A stretch of DNA of 64,000 bases, from positions 62,001 through 126,000 of the IMG/VR virus record IMGVR_UViG_3300017786_003484; one strand, written 5' to 3'. Under the pieces are notes generated by a model. It was not told the origin of the DNA. It saw nothing but the letters and a program-made list of their open reading frames with translations, and did not search any database. Made by a program: the position numbers and the translations under genes. Below are positions 40,151 through 63,471 of this stretch, piece after piece (position 1 is the stretch's first letter; every line of letters begins with the position of its first letter).

Positions 40151-42460
40151 ATGAACGAAACGGTAAATGTAGTAAAAAGAAATGGATCAGTTGAACCATT
40201 AGATATCAACAAGATTCATGTAATGGTAGAAGAGGCATGTGAAGGACTAGCAGGAGTAAGTGTTTCCCAAGTAGAGATGAATGCAGATTTACAATTTACA
40301 GATAAGATTGCAACATCAGATATACAAGAAATTTTAGTAAGAAGTGCAAGTGACTTAATTAGTTTAGATCATCCAAACTATCAATATGTTGCGGCTAGAC
40401 TTTTATTATACGGTCTCCGCAAAGATGTATTTGGTAAGTTTGATTATGCTCCTCTTTATGACCTAGTAAAAGAAAATGTTAAACAAGGAGTATATGATGC
40501 TGAGTTATTAGAAATTTACTCAGAAGAAGATTGGAATCAACTTGATACATATATGAATCATACAAGAGACTTAGACTTTACATTCGCTGGAATGAGACAA
40601 GTAGCTGACAAATATCTAGTACAAGATAGAAGTTCAGGACATATATACGAAACACCACAATATATGTATATGTTAATTGCCGCAACTATTTTTGCAAGTT
40701 ATCCTGATAATAAAAGGTTATCATATATTCGCCGTTACTATGATGCTATTTCTACATTTAAAATTAATATTCCGACTCCAATTATGTCGGGTGTTCGCAC
40801 TCCAATAAGACAGTTTGCTTCTTGCGTTCTAGTTGACGTAGACGACACATTACCTTCGATCTTTAATAGTTCTTCTGCCGTTGGATATTACATTGCTCAA
40901 CGTGCTGGTATTGGACTTAATTTAGGTCGTGTTCGTAGTATTGGATCTAAGATTCGTGGTGGTGAAGTAGCACACACTGGAGTTATTCCTTTCCTAAAAG
41001 TTTTTGAATCAGTAGTGCGTTCATGTACACAAAATGGTGTTCGCGGTGGAAGTGCTACAGTACATTTTCCTATCTGGCATAAAGAGATTGAGGATATTAT
41101 TGTACTAAAGAATAATAAAGGAACGGAAGATAACAGAGTCCGTAAGCTCGACTATTCAATTCAGATCAGTAAGATCTTTTATGAAAGGCTAATTGAAAGT
41201 AAACCAATTAGTCTTTTTTCACCTCATGACTGCCCAGGATTATATGAGGCATTTGGTGATAATGATGCATTTGACGAATTATATTTAAAGTATGAAAAAG
41301 ACAAAAGTATTCCTAGGACTGAAATCCCAGCATATGAATTGTTTACAAGCATTTTAAAAGAACGTGCAGAGACAGGACGTATCTATATTATGAATATAGA
41401 TCATTGTAACCATCATAGTAGTTTTGATGCTAAAGTTAGAATGAGTAATCTATGTCAAGAAATTACTTTGCCAACAACACCTATTCAAGGTCTTGAGGAT
41501 GGTGCTGGAGAGATTGCATTATGTATCTTAAGTGCTATCAATGTTGGAACATTAAGAAACTATGATGATTTAGAAAATTTATGTGATTTAGCAGTTCGTG
41601 CTTTAGATCAGATAATTGATTACCAAAATTATCCGGTTAAAGCCGCAGAGCTATCCACTAAGGCAAGGCGTAGTTTAGGAATTGGATATATTGGACTAGC
41701 ACATTATCTAGCCAAAAGAGAATTACATTATAGTGATGACAAAGCCGCTCAAGAAGTTGGACGTTTAACAGAGGCTTTTCAGTATTATCTAATCTCGTCA
41801 AGTGTTGAATTAGCAAAAGAGAAAGGTGCTTGTTCTGCATATAATGAAACAAAATATAGTAGAGGTGTTTTACCTATTGATACATATAAAACTGACATTG
41901 ATGAGTTCTTAGGAACCAAGTTAGAGTTAGATTGGGAGGAGTTAAGAGCAAAAGTTAAAGAACATGGTATGAGACATAGTACATTATCAGCTCAGATGCC
42001 TTCAGAGAGTTCTTCTGTTGTTAGTAACGAAACAAATGGTATTGAACCACCAAGAGCATTTATGAATACTAAGAAAAGTAAGAAAGGTCCGTTAAAACAG
42101 ATCGTACCACAGTATAATAAACTTAAAAACAACTATAGTTTCTTGTGGGACGAAGGAGTCAATCAAGGCTATATTAAAATTGTTGCCGCAATGCAAAAGT
42201 TCTTTGATCAAGCAATTAGTGGCAACTGGAGTTATAACCCTAAGTTATATGAAAATAATGAAGTACCAATGAGTGTTATGTTTAATGACTTATTAACAAC
42301 TTACAAATATGGTTGGAAAACAAGTTACTATCAAAATACTTACGACTCAAAAGGAGAAGACGAAGAATTATTAGGTGAGGTTCCTGAGGAGTTTACCCAA
42401 CTTGCGGAGAACCCAAGTATTGTAATAGAAGAGGAAGAGTGTGAGGCATGCAACATTTAA
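40151..42460 (+). CDS. nrdA: Ribonucleotide reductase class Ia alpha subunit with ATP cone
   Basis: VVKRNG ATP cone, PTPIMSGVRTP..QFASCVL, TQNGVRGGSA, MSNLCQEI, CILSAIN, QMPSESSS, KTSYYQNT, CEACNI. Confidence 0.98.
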   Translation: MNETVNVVKRNGSVEPLDINKIHVMVEEACEGLAGVSVSQVEMNADLQFTDKIATSDIQEILVRSASDLISLDHPNYQYVAARLLLYGLRKDVFGKFDYAPLYDLVKENVKQGVYDAELLEIYSEEDWNQLDTYMNHTRDLDFTFAGMRQVADKYLVQDRSSGHIYETPQYMYMLIAATIFASYPDNKRLSYIRRYYDAISTFKINIPTPIMSGVRTPIRQFASCVLVDVDDTLPSIFNSSSAVGYYIAQRAGIGLNLGRVRSIGSKIRGGEVAHTGVIPFLKVFESVVRSCTQNGVRGGSATVHFPIWHKEIEDIIVLKNNKGTEDNRVRKLDYSIQISKIFYERLIESKPISLFSPHDCPGLYEAFGDNDAFDELYLKYEKDKSIPRTEIPAYELFTSILKERAETGRIYIMNIDHCNHHSSFDAKVRMSNLCQEITLPTTPIQGLEDGAGEIALCILSAINVGTLRNYDDLENLCDLAVRALDQIIDYQNYPVKAAELSTKARRSLGIGYIGLAHYLAKRELHYSDDKAAQEVGRLTEAFQYYLISSSVELAKEKGACSAYNETKYSRGVLPIDTYKTDIDEFLGTKLELDWEELRAKVKEHGMRHSTLSAQMPSESSSVVSNETNGIEPPRAFMNTKKSKKGPLKQIVPQYNKLKNNYSFLWDEGVNQGYIKIVAAMQKFFDQAISGNWSYNPKLYENNEVPMSVMFNDLLTTYKYGWKTSYYQNTYDSKGEDEELLGEVPEEFTQLAENPSIVIEEEECEACNI

Positions 42461-46758: not shown

Positions 46759-47838
46759 ATGGAGCCAATTAAATTAAAGTGGCTAATAGCTCACGAGCCA
46801 CAATACCTATTTGTCCGCACGGCAAAAGCATTCCAAGAAGAATTAGAAAAAAGATGTCCAGGAGAGTTTGATATTGAAATCCTAGACATGAAAACTTACA
46901 TTCAAAAGTACGATGAAGTACCAGAATTACATCTTAAACCAGCATCTATAAAAAACTTAGAGAAAGACTGGGAAAATAGCAATAATATGGGCGGCGGAAT
47001 TTTTAAATCTGTGGCACAATCAGAGATAGGCAAGAAATGGAAAGCATATTTTTCTGCAATTAAGGATGGACGTATTGACATTAGTCAAACACAAATTACA
47101 GTTATAGGATCTTTCTTATATAAGCCTTTTCACTCTTTAGACCTTCCATTCCTATTCAAGGATCATGACCATGTAACCAGAGCATTAGACGGATGGATTG
47201 GTAAAAAACTTCGCGGCGAGCTGGAAGATAGAACTGGAGTTAAATCTTTAGGTTTTACTTACTCAGGCGGATTTAGAATTATCGGTTCTAACCATGATAT
47301 TGAAGGAGTATCTGACTTAAAAGATACAACTGTACAGACTGTTCCGACTACTACTGCAATGTTTAATAGTCCAGAAATTGGCAGTACTGCTATTCCTAGA
47401 AGGTCAATGGATATTCAAGAAGCTAAAGATTTTGCTAAAGATAGTAACTCGGCTGTTGAAACAACTTACCTAAGATTTAAAGGAACAAATATTTTAAAGA
47501 CAAACCATTCTATGTTCTTAACTAGTATTTTAGCAGGATCAAAATTATTTGACAAGCTAACACCAGAACAACAAGAAGCTTTCAAAGAATCTGCTTATGC
47601 AGTATCAAAGATTGAAAGAAAATGGTCACTTGAAGACTGTGAAAAGTATGAAAGAGAAGCAGAAGAGAAAGGAATTCAGATAAGAGATATTACTCAAGAA
47701 GAATCTGATTTTCTTGCTTCTAATGCTCGTGTTTCGTACGAAGATTATTTTTCAACTGATCATCAAAACGGTGGTAAAGTGCCAGACGAGCTTTATCATA
47801 AACGTAAACGTATTGTTGACGATATTAAAGCAATATAA
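46759..47838 (+). CDS. dctP: Divergent TRAP substrate-binding protein (DctP fold) without signal peptide
   Basis: GRIDI, LDLPFLFKDHDH, LGFTYSGGFR, KLTPEQQEAFKESA; SD AAGGAG before the ATG and no hydrophobic leader. Confidence 0.8.
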   Translation: MEPIKLKWLIAHEPQYLFVRTAKAFQEELEKRCPGEFDIEILDMKTYIQKYDEVPELHLKPASIKNLEKDWENSNNMGGGIFKSVAQSEIGKKWKAYFSAIKDGRIDISQTQITVIGSFLYKPFHSLDLPFLFKDHDHVTRALDGWIGKKLRGELEDRTGVKSLGFTYSGGFRIIGSNHDIEGVSDLKDTTVQTVPTTTAMFNSPEIGSTAIPRRSMDIQEAKDFAKDSNSAVETTYLRFKGTNILKTNHSMFLTSILAGSKLFDKLTPEQQEAFKESAYAVSKIERKWSLEDCEKYEREAEEKGIQIRDITQEESDFLASNARVSYEDYFSTDHQNGGKVPDELYHKRKRIVDDIKAI

Positions 47839-47845
47839 GTAACAA

Positions 47846-47897
47846 AATAGACTAGATAGGTAATTCAATTTTAAAACCCTATCTAGTCTATTCTTTT
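47846..47897 (+). terminator. Long hairpin terminator
   Basis: AATAGACTAGATAGG / CCTATCTAGTCTATT 15-bp stem followed by CTTTT. Confidence 0.65.
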
Positions 47898-47957
47898 GAT
47901 AAATAAAGTTAACATGTGTATAGCACATGTTATTAATTAAAAAGGTACAAATAAAAT

Positions 47958-48176
47958 ATGGCAATAGAACTAACAGGCAAAGTAAAATGGTTTCAAGACG
48001 CAAAAGGATGGGGTTTTATTAAACCTGACGATGGTTCCGATGATGTTTTTGCACACTATTCAGCAATTAATTCGGATGGCTTTAAATCATTAAAAGAAGG
48101 TCAAGCAGTAACATTTGAAGTAATTCAAGGTGCTAAAGGACGTCAAGCCGCCAATATCAATTTAATTGAATCTTAA
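47958..48176 (+). CDS. cspA: Cold-shock protein
   Basis: GKVKWF..KGWGFI (RNP1), DVFAHYSAI (RNP2), [20 protein letters not shown]. Confidence 0.97.
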
Positions 48177-48309
48177 GACTAACTCTCCATAAATTATAAC
48201 AATAGTAATCTTAAAGACTAAATAGATTATGGTAGTACATGTATAGGAACATAGAGTAACTATGCATATAACATCTGTTTACAGAAAATAGATAAGGCAT
48301 TAGAGATTC

Positions 48310-48807
48310 ATGAGTTTAACTGACTTCATCGACAGAAGTATAAGTCGATTTGCAAAATATTATTCTTGGTTTGCATTACTAATGGTATTGTTCGTTGTGA
48401 TCAATGTCTTGGGAAGATATTTCTTTGACATTCGCAATGATTATGCAGTTGATTCAACATGGCAATTATACGGTATGCTTATTATGTTTGGTTGCAGTTA
48501 TTCATTAGGAAAAGAAGCACATATTAGAACAGATCTGTTCTGGAACAATTATAAAGATCGTACAAAAGCAATTATTGACTTTGTAAGTTATCTCTTACTA
48601 TTCTTTCCTTCATTTGCACTTATCACATACATCAGTTTCAATGATACATCAGCCGCTATTGAGATGAACGAACGTAGTTCTGAAACAATGGCCCAGCTTA
48701 TTATATGGCCTATGAAGATTGGTATCACACTTGGTTTAGTACTTTTGATGGTACAAGCATTGAGTCAAATGATCAAATGTTATAGAAGGATTTTTATCAA
48801 TGAGTAA
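48310..48807 (+). CDS. dctQ: TRAP transporter small permease
   Basis: Four TM segments; VLGRYFF, WQLYG, HIRTDLF. Confidence 0.92.
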   Translation: MSLTDFIDRSISRFAKYYSWFALLMVLFVVINVLGRYFFDIRNDYAVDSTWQLYGMLIMFGCSYSLGKEAHIRTDLFWNNYKDRTKAIIDFVSYLLLFFPSFALITYISFNDTSAAIEMNERSSETMAQLIIWPMKIGITLGLVLLMVQALSQMIKCYRRIFINE

Positions 48808-50194
48808 TGAATGGTTAGCAATGACAATGTTATTTACAATGATTGCTGGCATATTTGTTGGAGTTCCAGTTAGTTTTACACTAACATTCTTAGCATTAAT
48901 TTTTGGATTAATGGGATTAGGATTAAGTGTGTTTGATCTCACATATCTCAACCTATTAGGAGGACTTTCAGATGAAGTGCTGATGAGTATTCCTATGTTT
49001 ATCCTTATGGGTTATGTTGCTGAACGAGCCGGACTGGTAGAGAATTTATTTGAGAGCTTAAAAAAGGTACTTGCAGGAGTTCCAGGCAACTTATACATTG
49101 TTGTTATCTGTATTGCAGTATTAATTAGTTTAGCAACAGGAGTAGTCGGAGCATCAGTAACACTATTGGGCATTATGGCCGCTCCAAGTATGATTAAGCA
49201 AGGATACGATCCTAAACTATCAGCAGGAGTAATAGCAGGAGGCGGATCTCTTATCATGATCCCTCCATCCATTCCCCTTATTGTAATGGCGCCTACAATG
49301 AATCTTAATATCATTGACGTATATGCGGCCGCAATAGGACCAGGATTAGCGATTGCATTTATGTATCTAGTATACGTTATATTCCTTATAAAAACAAAGC
49401 CAGAGGTAGCACCTATGATACCTGTGGAAGAAAGAGTAAAAGTAGATTTCAAGTTAATTCTGTTAACGTTATGGCATATTGTGCCATTAGCATCATTGAT
49501 TCTTATTACATTAGGATCAATGTTATTTGGACTAGCAACTAGCACAGAAGCTGGTGCCTTTGGTGCCTTTGGTGCTTTATGTTTAGCCGCTATTAACAGA
49601 AGATTAACTTTAACAAATATTCAAGAAGCATTATTAAAAACTACCAATACGTCGGCAGTGGTAATGTTATTAGCAATTACGTCAACAATATTTGGTGCCG
49701 TATTTGCTTCCTTGGGTGGTGACAAAATCATTGTATCAGTACTAACTTCAATGCCTATACCCGGATGGGCAATAGTTGGAGCGATATTAGTGTTATGTCA
49801 TATTTTAGGCTGGCCCTTTGAGTGGCCAGTGGTAGTGCTAGTGTTCTTACCAATTTTCTTACCAGTATTAATTGATACTGGTGTTGACTTAATTTGGTTT
49901 GCGGCCGCTTTGGGTGTTATTTTACAAACAGCATATTTAACACCTCCTGTAGCCTTAACCGGATACTACCTAAAACAGGTGGTGCCTTCGTGGGATCTTA
50001 AATTAATATTCAAAGCAATGATGCCCTTTATGTATATTCAGGTTGTTTGTGTTGTAATATTGTTTATTACACCTGGCCTTGCAACATGGTTACCTAATTA
50101 CCTAGCAGAGCAAAGAAAAAATATAGTACAAGAAGTACTAGATGAGGATGTCAAAGGACAGGAAGTCGACTTCCTAGGTGTCCTTGGACAATAA
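48800..50194 (+). CDS. dctM: TRAP transporter large permease
   Basis: GVPVSF, IPMFILMG, GVVGASV, MIPPSIPLIV, ATSTEAG, AYLTPPV..GYYLK, PGLATWLP. Confidence 0.95.
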   Translation: MSNEWLAMTMLFTMIAGIFVGVPVSFTLTFLALIFGLMGLGLSVFDLTYLNLLGGLSDEVLMSIPMFILMGYVAERAGLVENLFESLKKVLAGVPGNLYIVVICIAVLISLATGVVGASVTLLGIMAAPSMIKQGYDPKLSAGVIAGGGSLIMIPPSIPLIVMAPTMNLNIIDVYAAAIGPGLAIAFMYLVYVIFLIKTKPEVAPMIPVEERVKVDFKLILLTLWHIVPLASLILITLGSMLFGLATSTEAGAFGAFGALCLAAINRRLTLTNIQEALLKTTNTSAVVMLLAITSTIFGAVFASLGGDKIIVSVLTSMPIPGWAIVGAILVLCHILGWPFEWPVVVLVFLPIFLPVLIDTGVDLIWFAAALGVILQTAYLTPPVALTGYYLKQVVPSWDLKLIFKAMMPFMYIQVVCVVILFITPGLATWLPNYLAEQRKNIVQEVLDEDVKGQEVDFLGVLGQ

Positions 50195-50213
50195 TATTTT
50201 GGAGAATAAAAAT

Positions 50214-51308
50214 ATGAAACGTTTCATCGGAGCGATATCAGCTATCGCAATGTCATTTGGCGTAGTGGCTTCAGTAGCAACTGCAAATGCCAAAGAACTA
50301 CAGATTGCATCTAGTTTTGGAGCAATCTCAACTTTTAACGAGCAAGCAAACTTTCTTGCCGAAAGAGTTAAAGTATTAACTGACGGAAAAATTGATATGA
50401 AAATCAGACCTTCCGGCGCATTAGTTCCTTCTTTTAAGGTTCTAGATGCTACGGCGTCAGGTGCAGTAGATGGTGCATGGACTCAGTCTTATTACTGGGT
50501 AGGAAAGTCAAAGACTCTTGCATTGTTTAATAGTCCGTTGGGAGGACCTTACGGTATGGACGGGATTGATTTCCTAGGTTGGATGTTCCACGGTGGTGGA
50601 CTTGAATTGTATAACGATTTTTATCAGAATGAGTTAAAAATGGATGTACAGGCACTTCCAGCAATGCCTACTCAGAATCAGCCATTAGGTTGGTTTCATA
50701 GACCAATTAAAGATCTAGCAGATCTTAAAAACTTTAAATGTCGTCAAACTGGCGCCAACGTAGAACTTTATGCTCGTATGGGTATGCAGACTATTGGTAT
50801 GCCAGGTGGTGAGATTATGGCCGCGGCCCAAAAGGGTGTTATTAATTGTGCTGAATTCGTTGGTGGTTTAGAAGACGAACGTCTTGGATTTCCAACTGTA
50901 TGGAAATACTACTACTTGAATTCATTGCATGAGCATTCAAATACTGGTGATCTATTGATTAACGGTAAAGTGTGGCGTTCAATGACTAAGCAACAGCAGA
51001 CCGCTGTTCGTTCTGCCGCTTATGAGTCATATCTATGGTGGTTAACTGATATTCAAGCAAAAAATGGTCAAGCACTTGCTAGAATGATCAAAGAGCATGG
51101 CGTTAGAGTTATGAAGACTCCAGCAGATATTTTGGTTGCTGAGTTAGAAACTATTGACGAAATGTTAGCAGAAAATGCCGCAAAGGATCCTTATTTTGCA
51201 AAAGTACTTGCTTCTCAGAAAGCATGGGCAAAGAAAGTAGTTCCATTTAAGAACGTAGCATTTACGCCTTATAACTATGCCGCAGATTACTACTGGAAGA
51301 AAAAGTAG
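50214..51308 (+). CDS. dctP: TRAP substrate-binding protein, TakP-like subfamily, with signal peptide
   Basis: MKRFIGAISAIAMSFGVVASVATANA signal; GALVPSFKVLDA..GAVDG, YYWVGK, WMFHGGGLEL, GWF.RPI..L.DLK..KCR, AEFVG, LGF. Confidence 0.93.
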   Translation: MKRFIGAISAIAMSFGVVASVATANAKELQIASSFGAISTFNEQANFLAERVKVLTDGKIDMKIRPSGALVPSFKVLDATASGAVDGAWTQSYYWVGKSKTLALFNSPLGGPYGMDGIDFLGWMFHGGGLELYNDFYQNELKMDVQALPAMPTQNQPLGWFHRPIKDLADLKNFKCRQTGANVELYARMGMQTIGMPGGEIMAAAQKGVINCAEFVGGLEDERLGFPTVWKYYYLNSLHEHSNTGDLLINGKVWRSMTKQQQTAVRSAAYESYLWWLTDIQAKNGQALARMIKEHGVRVMKTPADILVAELETIDEMLAENAAKDPYFAKVLASQKAWAKKVVPFKNVAFTPYNYAADYYWKKK

Positions 51309-51328
51309 TTTTAAAAGCATATAACGTT

Positions 51329-51361
51329 AAAAATAGGGTGCTTTATGCATCCTATTTTTTT
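51329..51361 (+). terminator. Intrinsic terminator
   Basis: AAAAATAGGGTGC-TTTAT-GCATCCTATTTTTT. Confidence 0.8.
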
Positions 51362-51502
51362 GGCTATAACTTCTATATTTGTTATAAATGTATAAATACA
51401 CTTGGATAGATACGGTTTAATACCTTATCGGAAAAAGCCAGTTTTCTATCTCAATGTTACTTGAAGTAATATTGTTTTCTTAAGAAAAAAAAGGAGTCAA
51501 TT

Positions 51503-52441
51503 ATGACACAGAAAATTAGATGGGTTCTAGCACATGAGCCAATTGAATTATTTCTAAGAGCGGCAAAAGTTTTCGCATCAGAAGTTAATGCAAAAGCAGA
51601 AGGCGCACTAGATATTGAAGTTATGACAATGAATGAGTATTCTGCAAAGTATAATAACGGTGTTGTTGTTACTAAGCACGAACTTGTTGATATGATTAAC
51701 AGAGGCGACATTGAAATGTCCCAAACATACACAGTAGACATTGGCGAATATGATCACGAATTCCGTGCATTAGATATGCCATTCCTATTTGAGTCACACG
51801 ACCACGCAACTAAAGTGTTCGAAGGCCCAATTGGTCAGTCACTACTAGACGGATTAACAGAATCAGCTGGTGTTAAAGGTTTAGCCTTTACATACTCCGG
51901 TGGATATAGAATTATTCCTGGACAAGAAGGAATTGATACTATTGAAGATATTAGAGATCTTAAACTTCGTACTTCTTTCTCACCTGTTGCTATTGAAACA
52001 TTCAAAGCAGTTGGTGCAAACGTAGTTCCAATGGAACTAGAAGAAATGACAGATGCAATCCAAGATGCAGACATTCAAGTTGGTGAGTCTACTTACCCAC
52101 GTATCTATGCATTAGGACAAGACAGAGTTTCTAAGGTTATTAACCACACAGAACACTCATTGTTCTTAACAAGCATCTTAATCAACCAAGACTTCTTTGC
52201 AACTCTTGGTGAAGAACTACAAGGTATTGTTGTAGACGCCGCTAAAACAGCCGCTAATTACGAACGTGTAATCAGCATTGAAGACGTTGCACTTACACAA
52301 GCTAAAGCTGAAAGCGATGGCATTGAAGTTCGTAGAATGTCAACAGAAGAAAAAGCTCGTTTCAAAGCCGCTACTGCTCATGTTTATGACATGTTCCCAG
52401 AGTTAGCTGGAACAGTTAAGAAGATCCAAGATACAAAATAA
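51503..52441 (+). CDS. dctP: Second signal-less DctP-fold protein
   Basis: RGDIEM, LDMPFLFESHDH, AFTYSGGYR, DLKLRT, GANVVPM, NHTEH; SD AAGGAG directly before MTQKIRW; TATAAATA at 51391-51398. Confidence 0.88.
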   Translation: MTQKIRWVLAHEPIELFLRAAKVFASEVNAKAEGALDIEVMTMNEYSAKYNNGVVVTKHELVDMINRGDIEMSQTYTVDIGEYDHEFRALDMPFLFESHDHATKVFEGPIGQSLLDGLTESAGVKGLAFTYSGGYRIIPGQEGIDTIEDIRDLKLRTSFSPVAIETFKAVGANVVPMELEEMTDAIQDADIQVGESTYPRIYALGQDRVSKVINHTEHSLFLTSILINQDFFATLGEELQGIVVDAAKTAANYERVISIEDVALTQAKAESDGIEVRRMSTEEKARFKAATAHVYDMFPELAGTVKKIQDTK

Positions 52442-52546: not shown

Positions 52547-52771
52547 ATGGATAAAGTTTTTGTTTTAGTAATTTCAATGTGGGGACACAATGGAACAGCA
52601 TGGGAATATATTGGAAACCAATCAGTTTTAAATCAAGACATGACATTACAACAATGTCAAGTTTTGTCAGACGAAGAAAAAACTTGGACTAAGCACGATA
52701 CAAACGAGTTTTATCGTATTCAAATGCAATGCTATCCTAAGAGATGCGCCGGTCAAAAAACCTGTAAATAA
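52547..52771 (+). CDS. Small Cys-containing hypothetical protein
   Basis: 74 aa; VFVLVISMWG...TLQQC...MQCYP. Confidence 0.65.
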   Translation: MDKVFVLVISMWGHNGTAWEYIGNQSVLNQDMTLQQCQVLSDEEKTWTKHDTNEFYRIQMQCYPKRCAGQKTCK

Positions 52772-52834
52772 CAACTAACGGATGTAAGTTCTTTAACACG
52801 TTAACTAAATATTAGCAATGGATAGGAGAACATT

Positions 52835-53920
52835 ATGCCGGCAAGAAATCATAGAAATTGGTTAAAGAAACCATTAGTAGAATATGTTAGTAGCGAAATA
52901 TATTCAAGTCAAGAAATATTTGAAGAAGAAATCGAAAGTATCTTTTCAAAGGTGTGGGTACCAGTATGCCACATCAGTGAAATGTATAACAAATTAGACT
53001 ATCGAACATCACAAATTGCTGGACATAATATTATTGTGTACAATACCGGAGATGGTGTACGAGCATATCGTAATTATGGCAGTTGGGCACCTACTGGAAC
53101 ATTGCAAGCACCTATTGTAACAGTTGAACCACAACTACATAGCGAAGTAAAGCACGGAGGTATGGTATGGGTAACACTTGATCCTAATCCTACACAGAGT
53201 GTTGAAGAGTGGACAGCAGGTGCATTTGATTGCATTGCTGATGCTATTGACACAGAAGAACTAGAAATTTTTCATTATCATAAAGCAATTATTCCTACCA
53301 ACTACAAACTATGGCATGATACTAACAGTGAATTCTATCATGACTTCATGCATTACTTTAATCGTGTAACTGGTTTCAACGATGAGTATTTTGCTAGAAA
53401 GAATATTCCCTTTGATAACGGGCATGTGAACGTTAGTAGTTTTACTGTAAATTATACAGAGTTTGATAAAGAAGGCGATAGAGGTGAACTAAGTTTTCCT
53501 AACTTACCTCCAAACCAATGGTATATGGTAGATTTGTTTCCTGGCTTTAACTTTAATTTACGTGGTAGTGCATATCGTTCAGATAGTGTTACGCCACTTG
53601 GACCAAATAGTGTACTAATAGAGTTTAGAGGATACGGTTTAAAGAAAGATACTCCAGAAGAAAGACAAACTCGTATTAAACATCATAATACTATCTGGGG
53701 ACCGTTTGGCAGAAACTTACATGAAGATCTTTTAGGTGTAACCGGGCAAGGAGCATCAATGTCTCCAGGCACAGAGAAAAGAAATATTTTACATGGAAGA
53801 CATGAAAATAGTACTATACATGATGAAGTTGGTATGCGTCACTACTATGCAGAATGGGGAAAATATATGGAGTTAGATCCTAGTAATCCAATAAAAGAGG
53901 TTGACAAAAAGGCCGCATAG
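52835..53920 (+). CDS. Ring-hydroxylating oxygenase alpha-subunit homolog lacking the Rieske cluster
   Basis: IFEEE.E.IFSKVWVPVCHISE, RAYRN, GGMVWVTL, NYKLWHDTNSEFYHDFMH, LFP, HEDL, RHYYAEW; no CxH/CxxH. Confidence 0.85.
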   Translation: MPARNHRNWLKKPLVEYVSSEIYSSQEIFEEEIESIFSKVWVPVCHISEMYNKLDYRTSQIAGHNIIVYNTGDGVRAYRNYGSWAPTGTLQAPIVTVEPQLHSEVKHGGMVWVTLDPNPTQSVEEWTAGAFDCIADAIDTEELEIFHYHKAIIPTNYKLWHDTNSEFYHDFMHYFNRVTGFNDEYFARKNIPFDNGHVNVSSFTVNYTEFDKEGDRGELSFPNLPPNQWYMVDLFPGFNFNLRGSAYRSDSVTPLGPNSVLIEFRGYGLKKDTPEERQTRIKHHNTIWGPFGRNLHEDLLGVTGQGASMSPGTEKRNILHGRHENSTIHDEVGMRHYYAEWGKYMELDPSNPIKEVDKKAA

Positions 53921-55156: not shown

Positions 55157-55924
55157 ATGAAAAAGACCATTGATGTGTATGACGGGCTTATTAGTAAAGA
55201 ACTACAACACGAAATACACGAATATGCACTTAATCATACATGGTATAGTGCATTACGTCATAACTGTGATTATGATGCTACAGTAGATCCACTAAACAAT
55301 GAATTAGGCGAAGGCGAACGAGGAATTATCCGACATCCGTATGGTAATAGTACTGATATGGTAAAAACTAGGCATCCGTTAATCTATAAACTGTTTCAAG
55401 AAATAAATGATAAAGTACTAGGAGGCAAAGCAGATATTGATGGTATAAAAGAAGATATTGGCGGACTTCGAAGTGGCAAGAACGTTTATAGTGACGGACA
55501 AAACTTCTTCCAAAAATACGATTATGACAATACTATTAAAGGTTGGACATGTTATATGAATGCAAAATGTCAGGCTCCAAAGAAATCATTGAAACCAGGA
55601 ATAGGATACATTCACAGAGATAGCGGCCCTGATTACGTTGATAAGACTAACTATGCAACTGTACTATTTGTTACTAATCCAAAATGGTTGCCAAGTTGGG
55701 GCGGAGAATATAACTTTTTTGGAGATGATTTAGATGGTGCTGAAATACATTCTAAGTACGGCTATCCCATAGGATTTCCAACAAACATTGTTGGTCATAA
55801 ACCAGGTAGAATAATTGTATATAGACACGATCAAAATCATATAAGTCTTCGTATAGCACCAGATGCTGAAGGAATGCCTGTTAGGGTGGCATTTAGGGTA
55901 AACTTGAATGATGATAATGAATAA
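55157..55924 (+). CDS. 2OG-Fe(II) oxygenase
   Basis: IHRDSG (HxD), TVLF..NPKW..SWGGE, KPGRIIVY....H, RVAF. Confidence 0.85.
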   Translation: MKKTIDVYDGLISKELQHEIHEYALNHTWYSALRHNCDYDATVDPLNNELGEGERGIIRHPYGNSTDMVKTRHPLIYKLFQEINDKVLGGKADIDGIKEDIGGLRSGKNVYSDGQNFFQKYDYDNTIKGWTCYMNAKCQAPKKSLKPGIGYIHRDSGPDYVDKTNYATVLFVTNPKWLPSWGGEYNFFGDDLDGAEIHSKYGYPIGFPTNIVGHKPGRIIVYRHDQNHISLRIAPDAEGMPVRVAFRVNLNDDNE

Positions 55925-56419: not shown

Positions 56420-57058
56420 ATGCTATCAACATATGCAAATAAACAAAATACTCATCTTGTAATAGATACAACAACTAATGGAATATTAATTGCAGTACAT
56501 AGCAACGTTGTTGCGAATGCAATATGTTTTAAAATATTGAATACAGAAGCAATGTCTATTAGGCTAGTAGATTTCAACGAGGAAATAAATCCATTGCTTA
56601 AACCACAGTTTAATGAGTCTAGTAATTTTATATTAACTAAAGTTGGACACAACTTAACACCTCAATCAACAGCAAATGTTGGACAACTTGTAAAAAGTAC
56701 AGATGGCAATGGCCGTTTTGGTGTAGCTAAAATGTCTGAAGTAACAGATGAGTGGATAGCATTAAGAAAGAAAGCACATAATATCAAAGAAGTTATAGCA
56801 AGTAGCGATCTTCGAGTTCTTAGATCAGCAACACCGAGCAAAAAGTTCTTTGGAGACACTATTACCTTTCCTTTTATTAAAAAAGAACTTGATAAATGTA
56901 ATCCACAGGAAGATCAATACACAGATGCTATTCGAGAATGGGCAAATATAGTAAATGTTCCTGTAAAAAAAGGATTTGAAATGCTATCAGCAGAAAGCAA
57001 TAATATTACTCATTTGGTTAATAATTCAAGAATATTTTGGAGTAAAAAATGTCTTTAA
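56420..57058 (+). CDS. Hypothetical protein, paralog of 58079-58798
   Basis: Shares ML.T..N..N..LID and EL.KC.P.EDQYT...EWA with the 58079 ORF. Confidence 0.7.
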   Translation: MLSTYANKQNTHLVIDTTTNGILIAVHSNVVANAICFKILNTEAMSIRLVDFNEEINPLLKPQFNESSNFILTKVGHNLTPQSTANVGQLVKSTDGNGRFGVAKMSEVTDEWIALRKKAHNIKEVIASSDLRVLRSATPSKKFFGDTITFPFIKKELDKCNPQEDQYTDAIREWANIVNVPVKKGFEMLSAESNNITHLVNNSRIFWSKKCL

Positions 57059-58086
57059 ATTATGCTTTTAGTACTAAATTAAAACATGGTAGTGAATATG
57101 CTAAGAAAGACATTGCTGTTTTTCGTTCTCTTTATCATATGGATCCAGATCCATTTTTAGTTGATAGAACTGACTCTGTGGTCTTTCCTTTCTCAGAAAA
57201 CAATTATTTTCCAATGATACAACCGTTATCTAATGTTATGAGTTGGGAAGAATGTACAAAAGAGAGAGTTGAAGAACTAATATCCTTTGACAAAGAACTT
57301 TATGTTATGTGGAGCGGAGGAATAGATAGTACATTAATGCTTTTATCTTTTATGAAATATAGTAATATGAATAATGTTACAATAGTTTTAAACATGGACT
57401 CAATTAAAGAATATCCTTATTTTTATAAAAGGTTTATAGCTCAATGTAATTATAAATTACTGTCAACTGAACAATTAATGAATAATGCATTGCTAAATGA
57501 CATCAATGGATTAATAGTATCAGCCGAACATGCTGATCAGTTAGTTGGATCTCCTTTGGCTCAGTTACTTGCAACAACATCAGGTAGAACAATGCTTGGT
57601 CTTCCATTTGATGAAGAAAATTTCAGCAAATTTTTAACAAACTTAAATGTTCCAGTACATCATATTGATACAATAATGGAACTCTATAACATTAGTATTA
57701 AAAACAGTCCTCGTCCAATTAAGAATATGTGGGATCTCTGTTGGTGGCATGGATTTAACTTTAAATGGCAAACCATCTACATGAAACTGGCTATTAGAAT
57801 AAAAAATCCTTTGAATCTTTTAACTTTCTACTCTTCGGTAAACTTTCAAAATACCAGTATACACCAAGAAGGTAATACACTTGATCTAAAGAAAGTTTTT
57901 AAAGATATAATCGTTAATTATACCGAAGATACTGAATACCTAAGAAAAGAAAAATTTGCATCTTCAACATTATATTATGGACTAACCTCTTCGACAGGAT
58001 TAGACAAAAATTGGAATAAAATTAATGTTGATATGATTGAATACTATAATAAAGATAACACTATAAAGGAAATAATGAATGCTTGA
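57049..58086 (+). CDS. PP-loop ATP pyrophosphatase (asparagine-synthetase C-domain-like, no glutaminase domain)
   Basis: VMWSGGIDST PP-loop; IVSAEHADQLVG resembles AsnB GeGaDelFgG. Confidence 0.8.
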   Translation: MSLNYAFSTKLKHGSEYAKKDIAVFRSLYHMDPDPFLVDRTDSVVFPFSENNYFPMIQPLSNVMSWEECTKERVEELISFDKELYVMWSGGIDSTLMLLSFMKYSNMNNVTIVLNMDSIKEYPYFYKRFIAQCNYKLLSTEQLMNNALLNDINGLIVSAEHADQLVGSPLAQLLATTSGRTMLGLPFDEENFSKFLTNLNVPVHHIDTIMELYNISIKNSPRPIKNMWDLCWWHGFNFKWQTIYMKLAIRIKNPLNLLTFYSSVNFQNTSIHQEGNTLDLKKVFKDIIVNYTEDTEYLRKEKFASSTLYYGLTSSTGLDKNWNKINVDMIEYYNKDNTIKEIMNA

Positions 58087-61780: not shown

Positions 61781-62683
61781 ATGAAGATATTACCCTTAGC
61801 CACGATCGCAGTATTCGTGGGCATCTTTACGGCGAATGCTGGTGAAAAACTAGCACTTCCGTCTACAGAAGGTGTAGACATTACAACATATGGTGAAGTC
61901 CGAGCATATGTTGAAACTTCGACTGTTAATGATGTTGATACAGCAATTAAAACATCAGACAGTAAAATAGGACTAAAATTTAAGACTAAAGAACCAGTAT
62001 ATGTCTTTGGAGAAATGTCAGCTAATGTTGATCTATCCTCAGACGGAGCAGACGATGTAACAACTCGGTTTGGTTATATTGGCGTAGGTACCAATGCATT
62101 GGGAGAAATTTCACTTGGACGTACAATGAGCATTATGGATTCATTTGTTGATAAAGCAGATGTGTTTATGGGTGCAGGAAATCAAGGAGTTCAGAAGACT
62201 CCTTTTACTATGAATAACAGTTTGAAGTATACTGGTAGTTTTAGCGGAGTCGATGTTGGCTTTCAAACACAAATGACTGATGATGCACAAGACCATGACT
62301 TGGATTTATATCAAATTGGTTTAGGCTACAAAGGCATTGGTGTTGCATATGCAAGAGATGAAATTAATTCATCTGACTACTATGGCTTGGGTGTTTCTCA
62401 AAAGTTTGGAAAAATTGGAGCATATGCTAGTGTATCGGTATTAGATGATGATACACAAGCAAATGATGCAGTTGGATATGAACTTGCTGGTTCATATGAT
62501 TTAAACGAAAAACTAACACTACAAGGCGGTTGGCAAGATACTGATGTTACATCAGATGACGGTAACTTGACAATTGAATCACAGTATGAGATTGCAACTC
62601 AATCAGTATTTTTTACTAATATTGATTATGACTTAACAACAGAAGATGCAACTCTTCGAACAGGTCTTAGCTTTACATTCTAA
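61781..62683 (+). CDS. Gram-negative outer-membrane porin
   Basis: Signal peptide, ITTYGEVR, SKIGLK, RFGYIG..T..LGEISLGR, NSLKYTGSFSG, alternating beta strands, C-terminal Phe (LSFTF). Confidence 0.9.
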   Translation: MKILPLATIAVFVGIFTANAGEKLALPSTEGVDITTYGEVRAYVETSTVNDVDTAIKTSDSKIGLKFKTKEPVYVFGEMSANVDLSSDGADDVTTRFGYIGVGTNALGEISLGRTMSIMDSFVDKADVFMGAGNQGVQKTPFTMNNSLKYTGSFSGVDVGFQTQMTDDAQDHDLDLYQIGLGYKGIGVAYARDEINSSDYYGLGVSQKFGKIGAYASVSVLDDDTQANDAVGYELAGSYDLNEKLTLQGGWQDTDVTSDDGNLTIESQYEIATQSVFFTNIDYDLTTEDATLRTGLSFTF

Positions 62684-62748: not shown

Positions 62749-63471
62749 TTGCCACTAATAGAGCAATATCCTAATTATAAATTCTTAGAAACCGTGTTTA
62801 GACTCGGACATCTAGATAAACTCAAAAAAGCATTTTATGACAGCAAGCCAGTATGGAACCAAAGAGCAACAAAAACATTCTTTGCTGATTGCGGCTGGTA
62901 TAAGTATCCTTATTGTTGTTTCGTTCCTGGTTATGAAGAATTAAATGCTCCAAACGTTATTGGTTTACTGCAATCTGAGATATACAATGCAACAGTTAAC
63001 ATTGTTAAAGAACTGTGGGTAGCACTATATAAAGAAACTGACGAAGAATGGATGCCTTTCGGAGCAGAACTTAACTTAGTAAATCCTGGCAGGAAAATTC
63101 AACCTCACACAGATAATCATTTCTATAGCAATTATGCAACTAGATGTCATGTTGTATTAGAAACTAATAGTAATGTAGAATTTACATTTGGAAACAACGA
63201 ATCACCAACATTTAATGTAGGACATTCTTTTATTTTCAACAATAAAAGAAGGCACGAAATATGCAATTTTGGAAGCACAAACAGAGTTCATTTAGTAGTA
63301 GATTTTTTACCCAAGAACATATTTCCTTATACAGAAAGAACTCTTGCTCCGTTTGGTACTGACAACTCGTGTCATATCATTAATACTATACGTTCAAGAG
63401 ATCATCCTTTGCATAATAAATATGTAGACTATGTTGATAATATACCTATACCTAAAAGAAAAACTATATGA
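62749..63471 (+). CDS. Aspartyl/asparaginyl beta-hydroxylase-like 2OG-Fe(II) oxygenase
   Basis: PGRKIQPHTD, RCHVVL.TN, FNNKRRHEI.N.G...RVHLVVD; TTG start with SD GAGGAGG. Confidence 0.8.
   Translation: MPLIEQYPNYKFLETVFRLGHLDKLKKAFYDSKPVWNQRATKTFFADCGWYKYPYCCFVPGYEELNAPNVIGLLQSEIYNATVNIVKELWVALYKETDEEWMPFGAELNLVNPGRKIQPHTDNHFYSNYATRCHVVLETNSNVEFTFGNNESPTFNVGHSFIFNNKRRHEICNFGSTNRVHLVVDFLPKNIFPYTERTLAPFGTDNSCHIINTIRSRDHPLHNKYVDYVDNIPIPKRKTI

What the first reader, a model, noticed from the sequence alone, without database searches (positions are those of the whole stretch)
52835..53920. Rieske-less ring-hydroxylating oxygenase alpha subunit
Between RAYRN and GGMVWVTL, canonical alpha subunits have roughly 60 residues carrying CxH...CxxH. 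Here there are about 25 residues with no ligands, a clean in-frame loss, while the mononuclear Fe site (EFYH-x3-H, distal EDL) is retained. In alpha3 oxygenases the Rieske centre of one subunit reduces the Fe of its neighbour. A phage subunit could therefore co-assemble with a host enzyme and borrow its electrons to change specificity, act as a dominant negative, or do non-Rieske chemistry on the TRAP substrate.
Basis: partly seen in the sequence, partly recalled or inferred. Interest (0 to 1): 0.78.

Follow-up and report, generated by a model that had tools for sequence, protein, structure and literature searches.

The report
Phage catalytic-only methanesulfonate monooxygenase subunit
This marine phage gene is an intact, strongly conserved copy of the iron-containing half of a 'split' methanesulfonate monooxygenase, whose missing Rieske iron-sulfur half sits on a separate reductase-fused protein in SAR116 bacteria, so the phage subunit most likely works only by plugging into the host's enzyme.

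Summary
ORF 52835-53920 (+, 361 aa) is a ring-hydroxylating-oxygenase alpha subunit. It lacks the CxH...CxxH Rieske fingers but keeps the mononuclear-iron site (E166, H169, H173, E297/D298).

It is not a one-off. At least 599 IMG/VR viral contigs carry it, none of 74 unique sequences has a Rieske motif, and dN/dS is about 0.08. Its closest full-length relative is genuine MsmA, the methanesulfonate monooxygenase alpha subunit with the CxH-X26-CxxH signature.

The missing Rieske motif in phage HMO-2011 'MsmA' and in ocean metagenomes was already noted in 2015 (PMC4433239). What I did not find in the searched literature is the likely explanation.

- In ten SAR116 loci with complete flanks, and in five partial ones, the same short subunit lies in an msm operon.
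- That operon also holds a beta subunit, a Rieske ferredoxin and a roughly 800-aa protein.
- The 800-aa protein is an MsmA paralog that keeps the Rieske site, has lost the iron site, and is fused to a ferredoxin-NAD reductase.

The two paralogs are reciprocally degenerate. The links to the TRAP genes, to altered specificity and to a dominant-negative role are not supported. No biochemistry exists for any of this.

The parts
52835..53920 (+). Gene for the Rieske-less, catalytic-only MsmA-like alpha subunit ('alpha-C'), 361 aa
   Evidence: ORF. PF00848 hit. 1203 homologs of 350-367 aa in the protein database. AF2 model matches RHO alpha subunits at Z up to 34.5.
52824..52828 (+). Shine-Dalgarno AGGAG, 6 nt before the ATG
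   Evidence: Read directly from the sequence.
52835..53074 (+). aa 1-80: N-terminal remnant of the Rieske-domain scaffold, up to RAYRN and ending just before the CxH position
   Evidence: phmmer alignments to CntA, IadD and NDO stop at aa 80. Beta strands 42-46, 55-61, 64-70 and 75-79 are present in the model. dN/dS 0.15.
53075..53158 (+). aa 81-108: short replacement loop where canonical MsmA carries CPH-X26-CMFH plus about 40 more residues. No Cys; H102 and H107 only; G88 of the old spacer retained
   Evidence: Alignments A1 and fus.aln. dN/dS 0.22.
53159..53884 (+). aa 109-350: catalytic (helix-grip) domain
   Evidence: PF00848. The SAR116 ortholog's aa 95-350 are 70-73% identical to canonical MsmA. 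dN/dS 0.046. 125 of 242 columns are at least 90% identical across phage, SAR116 and canonical groups.
53330..53353 (+). E166-F-Y-H169-D-F-M-H173: bridging carboxylate plus the two His iron ligands, with the same H-x3-H spacing as canonical MsmA
   Evidence: 100% conserved in 74 phage sequences. Identical to the canonical MsmA motif NYKLWHDTNSEFYHDFMH. Aligns to E205/H208/H213 of CntA with a one-residue shift.
53723..53728 (+). E297-D298 in FGRNLHEDL: the carboxylate iron ligand region
   Evidence: Nearly invariant across RHO relatives. 100% conserved in phage sequences. Lost in the SAR116 Rieske-only fusion paralog.
52547..52771 (+). 74-aa ORF immediately upstream, of unknown function. It travels with the gene in this phage lineage and in two related phage-like contigs
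   Evidence: tblastn finds it next to the gene in L010-L014, L095 (81%) and L112 (56%). No Pfam or NCBIfam hit.

Best explanation
The gene encodes the catalytic-only alpha subunit (alpha-C) of a split, SAR116-type methanesulfonate monooxygenase, carried by an uncultured marine jumbo myophage as an auxiliary metabolic gene.

An ancestral MsmA held both a Rieske [2Fe-2S] centre and a mononuclear Fe site. It was duplicated, and the two copies degenerated reciprocally.
- One copy (alpha-R) kept the MsmA-type CxH-X26-CxxH Rieske centre, lost the Fe ligands, and became fused to a ferredoxin-NAD(+) reductase.
- The other copy (alpha-C, the family of this gene) lost both Rieske fingers but kept the Fe site and the bridging glutamate.

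In alpha3-type Rieske oxygenases, electrons normally pass from the Rieske centre of one subunit to the Fe of its neighbour. A mixed alpha-R/alpha-C assembly with the beta subunit and the small Rieske ferredoxin can therefore be fully competent. The inferred path is NADH -> FAD (fused reductase) -> Rieske centre(s) -> Fe of alpha-C -> O2 + methanesulfonate -> formaldehyde + sulfite.

The phage carries only alpha-C. During infection it would supplement or replace the host's catalytic subunit and depend on host alpha-R-reductase, beta and ferredoxin.

Shown: homology, the deletions, conservation, the operon architecture in SAR116, and the absence of partner genes in all sampled phage loci. Inferred: co-assembly, the electron path, methanesulfonate as substrate, and a SAR116-like host for this phage.
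For: (1) The closest full-length relatives carry the MsmA-specific CxH-X26-CxxH. The window is 57% identical to Filomicrobium MsmA overall, and the SAR116 ortholog's catalytic part is 70-73% identical to canonical MsmA.

(2) All short forms are one clade (SH-aLRT 100) beside canonical MsmA. The fusion N-halves are one clade (99) nested inside canonical MsmA.

(3) Ten SAR116 loci with complete flanks (L097, L099, L100, L104-L106, L108-L110, L113), and five partial ones (L101-L103, L107, L111), share this order: sulfonate-type SBP | alpha-R~reductase (795-857 aa) | beta | Rieske ferredoxin | 274-aa ORF | alpha-C | LysR | TauE sulfite exporter | PanB-like | formate-THF ligase. It matches canonical msm loci except for the split.

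(4) All ten fusions keep the Rieske ligands. They lack WHDTNSEFYH (bridging Glu and first His), the second His, and NLHEDL. Database members carry Pfam Rieske and reductase domains but no PF00848.

(5) The constraint is reciprocal. In alpha-R the Rieske domain is 93% identical among SAR116 copies and the catalytic remnant 50%. In alpha-C the catalytic domain is 93% and the Rieske remnant 79%.

(6) alpha-C retains E166, the carboxylate that in canonical enzymes links a neighbour's Rieske His to the Fe ligand, at 100%.

(7) The alpha-R catalytic remnant is still predicted to fold (pLDDT 85-96 in core strands), which fits a scaffold role.

(8) The phage copies are under strong purifying selection: dN/dS 0.079 overall and 0.046 in the catalytic domain, across at least 599 viral contigs. 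There is one fixed difference from SAR116 alpha-C in the catalytic domain.

(9) The only cultured phage with the gene, HMO-2011, infects SAR116.

(10) There is biochemical precedent for a Rieske-less oxygenase served by a Rieske centre on its reductase: NdmCDE (PMC4408171).
Against: - No biochemistry exists for alpha-C, alpha-R or their complex. Co-assembly could not be modelled with the tools available, which predict single chains only.
- The host of this 244-kb phage is unknown. Its TerL is only 48-49% identical to jumbo phages of unrelated hosts, and neighbouring genes resemble pelagimyophage-type gene sets. If the host lacks alpha-R, the subunit would be orphaned.
- Two SAR116 loci (L096, L098) show alpha-C without partners in the 8 kb upstream.
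- According to PMC4433239, IMCC1322 has a Rieske-containing MsmA. I could not inspect whether it is the fusion or a canonical copy.
- Phage sequences (HMO-2011, L095) branch at the base of the short clade, so the direction of transfer is unresolved.
- Synonymous sites are saturated, so the dN/dS values are approximate.
Confidence: 0.6

Rival explanations
1. The Rieske centre acts in trans but without mixed alpha assembly. alpha-C forms its own alpha3 or alpha3beta3 hydroxylase. A stand-alone Rieske protein (the 133-aa ferredoxin), or the Rieske domain of the reductase fusion, docks transiently into the space vacated by the deleted fingers and reduces the Fe directly, in an NdmCD-like way. The alpha-like body of the fusion is then only a relic.
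For: A separate Rieske ferredoxin is conserved in the SAR116 operon. NdmD delivers electrons from a reductase-borne Rieske centre. The catalytic remnant of alpha-R evolves fast, at 50% identity.
Against: The alpha-R remnant is retained at full length in all ten loci and is predicted to fold. That is unexpected for a useless relic. alpha-C keeps the Rieske-domain scaffold that forms the inter-subunit contact in canonical trimers. A canonical msmC-type Rieske ferredoxin is also present in unsplit systems, so it does not by itself replace the alpha Rieske centre.
Confidence: 0.25
2. It is a redox-independent or self-sufficient enzyme with different chemistry, for example an oxidation in which the substrate supplies all the electrons. 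It might act on whatever the adjacent phage TRAP transporter imports.
For: No reductant-delivering cofactor is present in the polypeptide. TRAP genes lie directly upstream in the window.
Against: TRAP genes accompany the gene only in the window's own lineage: DctM in 5 and the adjacent DctP in 7 of 95 phage loci. The catalytic domain is almost unchanged from canonical MsmA, with 5 short-specific substitutions. The bridging Glu for Rieske-to-Fe transfer is invariant. In cells the gene sits in an msm operon with a sulfite exporter and C1-folate genes. The nearest solved relatives of the TRAP binding proteins bind keto acids, polyols and assorted other ligands, which gives no link to methanesulfonate.
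Confidence: 0.07
3. It is a non-catalytic decoy or dominant-negative subunit that the phage uses to poison the host's oxygenase, or a decaying pseudo-enzyme.
For: It lacks a cofactor that is essential in every characterised alpha subunit of this family.
Against: The same form is a vertically inherited operon member in SAR116 cells, and the alpha-R and alpha-C trees are congruent. The Fe ligands and the catalytic domain are the most constrained parts (dN/dS 0.046). No frameshifts or stops occur in 95 loci; three apparent cases were artefacts of my ORF extension.
Confidence: 0.05

Closest known systems
[quoted passage not shown]
   Same: Nearest full-length homolog. The window is 57% identical overall, and the SAR116 ortholog's catalytic part is 70-73% identical. 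The Fe-site motifs are the same (NYKLWHDTNSEFYHDFMH, FGRNLHEDL). A remnant of the MsmA-type inter-finger spacer is present. In SAR116 the short form sits in an msm-type locus with msmB, msmC, a sulfonate SBP, TauE and C1-folate genes.
   Different: Both Rieske fingers are deleted, a net loss of 47 residues. The defining CxH-X26-CxxH signature is therefore absent, and the subunit cannot carry out intramolecular or homotrimeric Rieske-to-Fe transfer. In phage it stands alone, without msmB, msmC or msmD.
'MsmA' auxiliary metabolic gene of Puniceispirillum (SAR116) phage HMO-2011, ORF61 (Kang et al. 2013; its missing Rieske motif was noted by Henriques & De Marco 2015, PMC4433239)
   Same: Same family: 67.8% identity over 98% of the length, also Rieske-less, also phage-borne without partners.
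   Different: HMO-2011 is a 55-kb podophage and the window is a 244-kb myophage. The two sit in different sub-branches of the short clade. The literature treats the gene simply as MsmA and does not explain how it could work.
NdmCDE N7-demethylase of Pseudomonas putida CBB5
   Same: The catalytic non-heme-iron subunit (NdmC) lacks a Rieske cluster, and the Rieske centre is carried by the reductase (NdmD). This shows biochemically that a split Rieske oxygenase can function (PMC4408171).
   Different: No specific sequence relationship, since the nearest relatives here are MsmA. As the review describes it, the Rieske domain is split off the oxygenase and fused to the reductase NdmD, which also holds a second [2Fe-2S] cluster, an FMN-binding domain and an NADH-binding domain. 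Here each paralog instead keeps a vestige of the lost half, and the fused reductase is of the Pyr_redox_2 + Reductase_C (putidaredoxin/BphA4 reductase-like) type. No GST-like NdmE equivalent was seen.
alpha3beta3 Rieske oxygenases with solved structures (TPADO 7q05/7q06, NDO 1ndo, BPDO, NagGH 7c8z) and alpha3 CntA (6y8j)
   Same: Same two-domain fold and relative domain orientation: Z 30-34.5, rmsd 2.4-2.9 A over about 290-328 residues.
   Different: 13-22% sequence identity. All of them bind a Rieske cluster, and this protein cannot.

Membership tests
Rieske non-heme iron oxygenase alpha subunit (RHO) | Rieske [2Fe-2S] ligands CxH-X(15-30)-CxxH in the N-terminal domain | tested here: not met
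   No such motif in the window protein or in any of 74 unique phage sequences. The Pfam Rieske model matches only positions 2-41 of 88, below cutoff. Alignments show both fingers deleted.
Rieske non-heme iron oxygenase alpha subunit (RHO) | C-terminal catalytic helix-grip domain (PF00848) with a 2-His-1-carboxylate Fe site | tested here: met
   PF00848 at E 1.6e-6, above the gathering score. H169, H173 and E297/D298 are invariant. Structural match at Z up to 34.5.
Rieske non-heme iron oxygenase alpha subunit (RHO) | Bridging carboxylate two residues before the first His ligand, which couples a neighbouring Rieske centre to the Fe | tested here: met
   E166 is 100% conserved. It aligns with E205 of CntA.
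Rieske non-heme iron oxygenase alpha subunit (RHO) | Head-to-tail alpha3 (or alpha3beta3) assembly | not testable with these tools
   Only single-chain prediction was available. The Rieske-domain scaffold that forms the contact is retained.
MsmA (methanesulfonate monooxygenase alpha) | Rieske motif with the 26-residue spacer (CxH-X26-CxxH), used in the literature as the MsmA signature | tested here: not met
   Absent here. It is present in canonical relatives and in the SAR116 alpha-R fusion. The criterion comes from PMC4433239.
MsmA (methanesulfonate monooxygenase alpha) | Closest phylogenetic affinity to proven MsmA and near-identical catalytic-site motifs | tested here: met
   The short clade lies beside the canonical MsmA group that contains Filomicrobium. 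125 of 242 catalytic columns are at least 90% identical in all groups, with only 5 short-specific changes.
MsmA (methanesulfonate monooxygenase alpha) | Encoded with msmB, msmC, msmD and sulfonate transport genes | tested here: not met
   None of these genes is in the window or in any of 95 phage loci. The condition is met, in modified split form, for the SAR116 cellular orthologs.
MsmA (methanesulfonate monooxygenase alpha) | Oxidises methanesulfonate to formaldehyde and sulfite | not testable with these tools
   Requires an enzyme assay.
Split Rieske oxygenase of the NdmCDE kind | Catalytic subunit without a Rieske cluster, plus a Rieske centre carried on the reductase polypeptide | tested here: met
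   Met for the SAR116 system, to which the phage protein is 72-75% identical. The partner is not encoded in the window.
Split Rieske oxygenase of the NdmCDE kind | Homology to NdmC/NdmD and dependence on a GST-like NdmE | not tested
   No Ndm sequence was compared. All the nearest homologs found are MsmA-type. No GST-like gene was seen in the SAR116 operon.
Phage auxiliary metabolic gene | Metabolic gene of cellular type inside a bona fide phage genome, intact and under purifying selection | tested here: met
   Tail sheath, TerL, helicases and RNR are in the same window. Cellular orthologs occur in SAR116. dN/dS is 0.079.

The most novel reading that the evidence does not exclude
SAR116 bacteria and their phages use an obligately heteromeric Rieske oxygenase made by reciprocal degeneration of a duplicated alpha subunit. 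One copy is a Rieske-only alpha fused to its reductase, and the other is an Fe-only alpha. Abundant marine phages carry just the Fe-only, turnover-bearing subunit and plug it into the host's electron-delivery scaffold. This would be analogous to cyanophage psbA replacing the damage-prone D1 subunit. It would be the first natural alpha/alpha' hetero-oligomeric Rieske oxygenase. It would also mean that marine methanesulfonate oxidation capacity is mis-counted by markers that require the Rieske spacer.
Probability: 0.45. Interest if true: 0.75.

Novelty: new variant of a known kind. Interest (0 to 1): 0.6.

Why it matters
Methanesulfonate is a major atmospheric and oceanic sulfur intermediate, and SAR116 is one of the most abundant surface-ocean clades. 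msmA surveys use the 26-residue Rieske spacer as the marker (PMC4433239). They would therefore miss the catalytic subunit of the SAR116/phage system. They would count instead a protein that, judged by its sequence, cannot bind the catalytic iron.

For enzymology, the paired alpha-R/alpha-C proteins are a natural experiment. They separate the electron-entry half of a Rieske oxygenase from its O2-activating half. They also give a second, independently evolved split design besides NdmCDE.

For phage biology, at least 599 viral contigs carry a subunit that can only work inside a host complex. That makes host-phage enzyme chimerism directly testable with the cultured pair HMO-2011 and IMCC1322.

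Tried and rejected
- PHROGs gave no family for the protein.
- NCBIfam gave only sub-threshold N-terminal matches to anthranilate, benzoate and GbcA alpha subunits.
- Alternative cluster ligands are rejected. The conserved Cys (C45, C103, C133) are all shared with canonical MsmA. C103 is Ser in the window, and only H102 and H107 are new.
- I looked for a conserved phage-encoded partner next to the gene. The HMO-2011 neighbours ORF60 and ORF62, the 151-aa ORF of L001 and the window's 74-, 241- and 255-aa ORFs are not shared across phage lineages. No beta subunit, Rieske ferredoxin, reductase, SBP, TauE, PanB or FTHFS gene occurs in any phage locus.
- The TRAP-substrate link is rejected.
- Three phage loci flagged with 'internal stops' were artefacts of my ORF extension. 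Those genes are intact.
- dN/dS among SAR116 copies could not be computed because synonymous sites are saturated, so I used amino-acid identity by domain instead.
- Host inference from DctM through the protein atlas reached only 'Pseudomonadota'.
- The first genome scan with the mixed alignment A1 failed for lack of conserved blocks. It worked with the short-form alignment A3.
- Kang et al. 2013 (PMC3725092) is not held in the library.
- The placement of P0121, a 358-aa short form on a phage-like contig, is unreliable because of its long branch.
Full report
**What is in the window**

ORF 52835-53920 (+) encodes 361 aa and has a good Shine-Dalgarno sequence, AGGAG, 6 nt upstream.

The window belongs to a phage. 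It holds a tail sheath gene (5829-8195), TerL (14195-15754), two helicases and class I RNR (40151-42460). The sequence is identical to part of a 244,432-bp JGI seawater contig. The nearest cultured TerL relatives are jumbo myophages (PA5oct-like, Phosso, Atu_ph07) at 48-49% identity, so the host is unknown.

**Checking the observation**

- Pfam finds the RHO catalytic domain (PF00848, aa 142-346). It matches only the first 41 of 88 positions of the Rieske model, at aa 41-80.
- Sequence matches to solved alpha subunits (CntA, IadD, NDO and others) cover aa 18-80 and end exactly where CxH should begin.
- In alignments with full-length relatives, the short protein lacks both ligand fingers. Canonical MsmA has 70 residues from the N of the RAFLN motif to EVK, and the window has 23. 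The invariant spacer glycine (G88) survives between the two deletions.
- E166-x2-H169-x3-H173 and E297-D298 are present.
- The AF2 model (pLDDT 88.6, pTM 0.89) superposes on alpha subunits of TPADO, NDO, BPDO, NagG and CntA at Z 30-34.5 and rmsd 2.4-2.9 A. The match runs over aa ~12-347, so it includes the beta-sandwich base of the former Rieske domain.

**Is it a one-off or decaying?**

No.
- The protein database holds 1203 relatives. The best 120 are all 350-367 aa long and 77-100% identical.
- IMG/VR holds at least 599 viral contigs with the gene.
- In 74 unique coding sequences, none has a Rieske motif.
- Nei-Gojobori dN/dS is 0.079 overall, 0.046 in the catalytic domain, 0.15 in the N-terminal remnant and 0.22 in the replacement loop. 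Synonymous sites are near saturation, so these values are approximate.
- The Fe ligands and E166 are invariant.
- No new cluster ligands have appeared. The conserved cysteines C45, C103 and C133 are all shared with canonical MsmA, and C103 is Ser in the window.

**What family it belongs to**

The closest full-length relatives carry CxH-X26-CxxH, the signature spacer of MsmA, the alpha subunit of methanesulfonate monooxygenase. The criterion comes from PMC4433239.

- The window protein is 57% identical to Filomicrobium MsmA over the full length.
- The SAR116 ortholog of the short form is 70-73% identical to canonical MsmA across aa 95-350.
- Of 242 catalytic-domain columns, 125 are at least 90% identical across phage, SAR116 and canonical groups. 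Only five substitutions are specific to the short forms, and one separates phage from SAR116.

This argues for the same substrate and against altered specificity.

**What was already known**

The only cultured phage with the gene is the SAR116 podophage HMO-2011, where ORF61 is 67.8% identical and annotated as the MsmA alpha subunit. Reviews cite it as a sulfur-cycle AMG.

Henriques & De Marco (2015) stated explicitly that the HMO-2011 protein, and many GOS and virome 'MsmA' sequences, lack all four Cys/His ligands. They also noted that Ca. P. marinum IMCC1322 has two 'MsmA' genes, only one of which has the motif. So the bare observation is published.

That paper contains neither 'fusion' nor 'fused', and it excluded the Rieske-less sequences from its tree. 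The SAR116 genomics papers I searched refer only to 'msmA'.

**The explanation from cellular genomes**

A scan of one genome per species returned two kinds of hit.
- Long forms, 54-58% identical, occur in Filomicrobium, Hyphomicrobiaceae and others. These are canonical msmA followed by msmB and a Rieske-type msmC.
- Short forms, 71-75% identical and about 353-358 aa, occur in SAR116/Puniceispirillum single-cell genomes and MAGs, on contigs up to 606 kb.

Ten SAR116 loci with complete flanks, and five partial ones, share this gene order:

sulfonate-type SBP (-) | a 795-857-aa protein | Ring_hydroxyl_B beta subunit | 133-aa Rieske protein | 274-aa ORF | short alpha | LysR (-) | TauE sulfite exporter | PanB-like | formate-THF ligase

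The N-terminal 385 or so residues of the large protein are an MsmA paralog.
- Its Rieske domain is almost identical to canonical MsmA, including CPH-X26-CMFH.
- Its catalytic domain lacks WHDTNSEFYH (bridging Glu and first His), the second His, and NLHEDL. This holds in all ten loci.
- Its C-terminal half is a putidaredoxin/BphA4-type ferredoxin-NAD reductase.
- Database members carry Pfam Rieske and reductase domains but not PF00848. NCBI names them only 'FAD-dependent oxidoreductase'.

The constraint is reciprocal. Among SAR116 copies the fusion's Rieske domain is 93% identical and its catalytic remnant 50%. The short alpha's catalytic domain is 93% identical and its Rieske remnant 79%. The fusion's catalytic remnant is still predicted to fold.

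In the tree, all short forms are one clade (SH-aLRT 100), and the fusions are one clade (99) nested within canonical MsmA. The two paralogs show congruent branching within SAR116, which indicates long co-residence.

**Mechanism**

In alpha3-type Rieske oxygenases the Rieske centre of one subunit reduces the Fe of its neighbour through a bridging carboxylate. This is established knowledge for NDO and CntA.

A Rieske-only alpha (alpha-R) and an Fe-only alpha (alpha-C) are therefore complementary. Each also keeps the vestigial domain that is needed for the inter-subunit contact.

I infer a mixed alpha-R/alpha-C (plus beta) hydroxylase with its reductase covalently attached. The inferred route is NADH -> FAD -> Rieske centre(s) -> alpha-C Fe, oxidising methanesulfonate to formaldehyde (handled by the folate genes) and sulfite (exported by TauE).

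NdmCDE shows biochemically that a Rieske-less oxygenase can be served by a Rieske centre on its reductase (PMC4408171). The SAR116 design is independent of it and differs from it, because each half keeps a relic of the other.

The main rival has alpha-C homo-oligomers reduced directly by the small Rieske ferredoxin, or by the fusion's Rieske domain, without mixed assembly. I cannot exclude this.

**The phage copy**

None of the 95 phage loci, including the window, encodes a beta subunit, a Rieske protein, a reductase or any other msm-locus gene in its flanks. The phage subunit must therefore rely on host partners.

Decoy or dominant-negative readings fit poorly with the extreme constraint on the catalytic residues.

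TRAP genes adjoin the gene only in the window's own near-identical lineage: DctM in 5 and the adjacent DctP in 7 of 95 loci. In other myophages the syntenic region runs RNR-Grx-...-CSD-[alpha-C] without TRAP genes. The nearest solved relatives of the TRAP binding proteins give no link to methanesulfonate.

**Caveats**

- There is no biochemistry for any component.
- The host of this phage is unassigned.
- Two SAR116 loci lack the partners within 8 kb upstream of alpha-C.
- Phage sequences (HMO-2011, L095) branch at the base of the short clade, so the direction of transfer between cell and phage is unresolved.
- I could not inspect the IMCC1322 genes.

**Verdict**

The window's gene is a new member of an abundant phage AMG family.

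The added value is a specific, testable mechanism: a reciprocally degenerate split MsmA whose partner is a reductase-fused, Rieske-only paralog in SAR116. I did not find this mechanism in the searched literature.

Noticed in passing
window 46759-52441 (+): A near-complete TRAP transporter cassette inside a phage genome. It comprises a DctP-like gene (46759-47838), a cold-shock-domain gene (~47958-48176), DctQ (48310-48807), DctM (48800-50194) and two further DctP binding proteins (50178-51308 and 51503-52441). It is found only in this phage lineage. The substrate is unresolved: the nearest solved relatives are a ketoacid-binding protein, SmoM and assorted DctPs including an isethionate binder.
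   Followed up: partly
L105:3243-5690 and the equivalent genes in L097, L099, L100, L104, L106, L108, L109, L110, L113: SAR116 proteins of about 800 aa consist of an MsmA-type Rieske domain, a catalytic domain stripped of its Fe ligands, and a ferredoxin-NAD reductase. Public annotation calls them only 'FAD-dependent oxidoreductase'. About 38 clusters exist in the protein database, some with hundreds of member sequences.
   Followed up: yes
L001-L004:11102-11482 and 7 further phage loci; L174:1072-1470: Fe-S cluster biogenesis genes sit directly beside the short alpha in two separate phage lineages. One lineage has a NifU_N/IscU scaffold immediately downstream (11 loci). The other (L174) has an IscA/HesB-like gene immediately upstream. 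This could reflect a need to supply Rieske clusters to host partners. No such gene is in the window.
   Followed up: partly
L094, L095, L112 (genome contigs): Contigs binned into Hellea, 'Rickettsiales' and 'Legionellales' MAGs carry phage-clade copies of the gene. L095 and L112 also carry homologs of phage neighbour ORFs. These are probably phage contigs mis-binned into MAGs.
   Followed up: partly
L096 and L098, 1-8000: Two SAR116 loci have the short alpha with the downstream LysR, TauE, PanB and FTHFS genes. Upstream, instead of alpha-R, beta and the Rieske ferredoxin, they have ABC-transporter genes, a GcvT-like aminomethyltransferase and a PTA_PTB gene. The partner genes may lie further away or be absent.
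   Followed up: partly
window 61781-62683 and 62749-63471 (+): The phage encodes a Porin_4-family outer-membrane porin and an Asp/Arg beta-hydroxylase-family protein. The Pfam marks come from the identical contig.
   Followed up: no
window 55157-55924 and 57049-58086 (+): A 255-aa ORF has a faint match to a 2OG-Fe(II) oxygenase (FlmC family, E 0.009). A 345-aa ORF has a weak PHROG match to PAPS reductase (E 2.6e-5). Both lie downstream of the gene, and the 255-aa ORF is restricted to this lineage.
   Followed up: no
L001-L008 (phage contigs with the gene): Related myophage contigs carry ribosomal protein S21, ClpS, heme oxygenase, HSP20, an IMPDH-like gene, several 2OG-Fe(II) oxygenases and a tryptophan-halogenase-like gene near the short alpha. 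This is a rich AMG island downstream of the RNR-glutaredoxin module.
   Followed up: no
P0121 / L174:1457-2533: A more divergent short form (358 aa, 60% identical) lies on a phage-like contig with an Mtd_N tail-fibre gene. It falls on a long branch among canonical MsmA rather than in the short clade. This is either a second, independent loss of the Rieske fingers or a long-branch artefact.
   Followed up: partly
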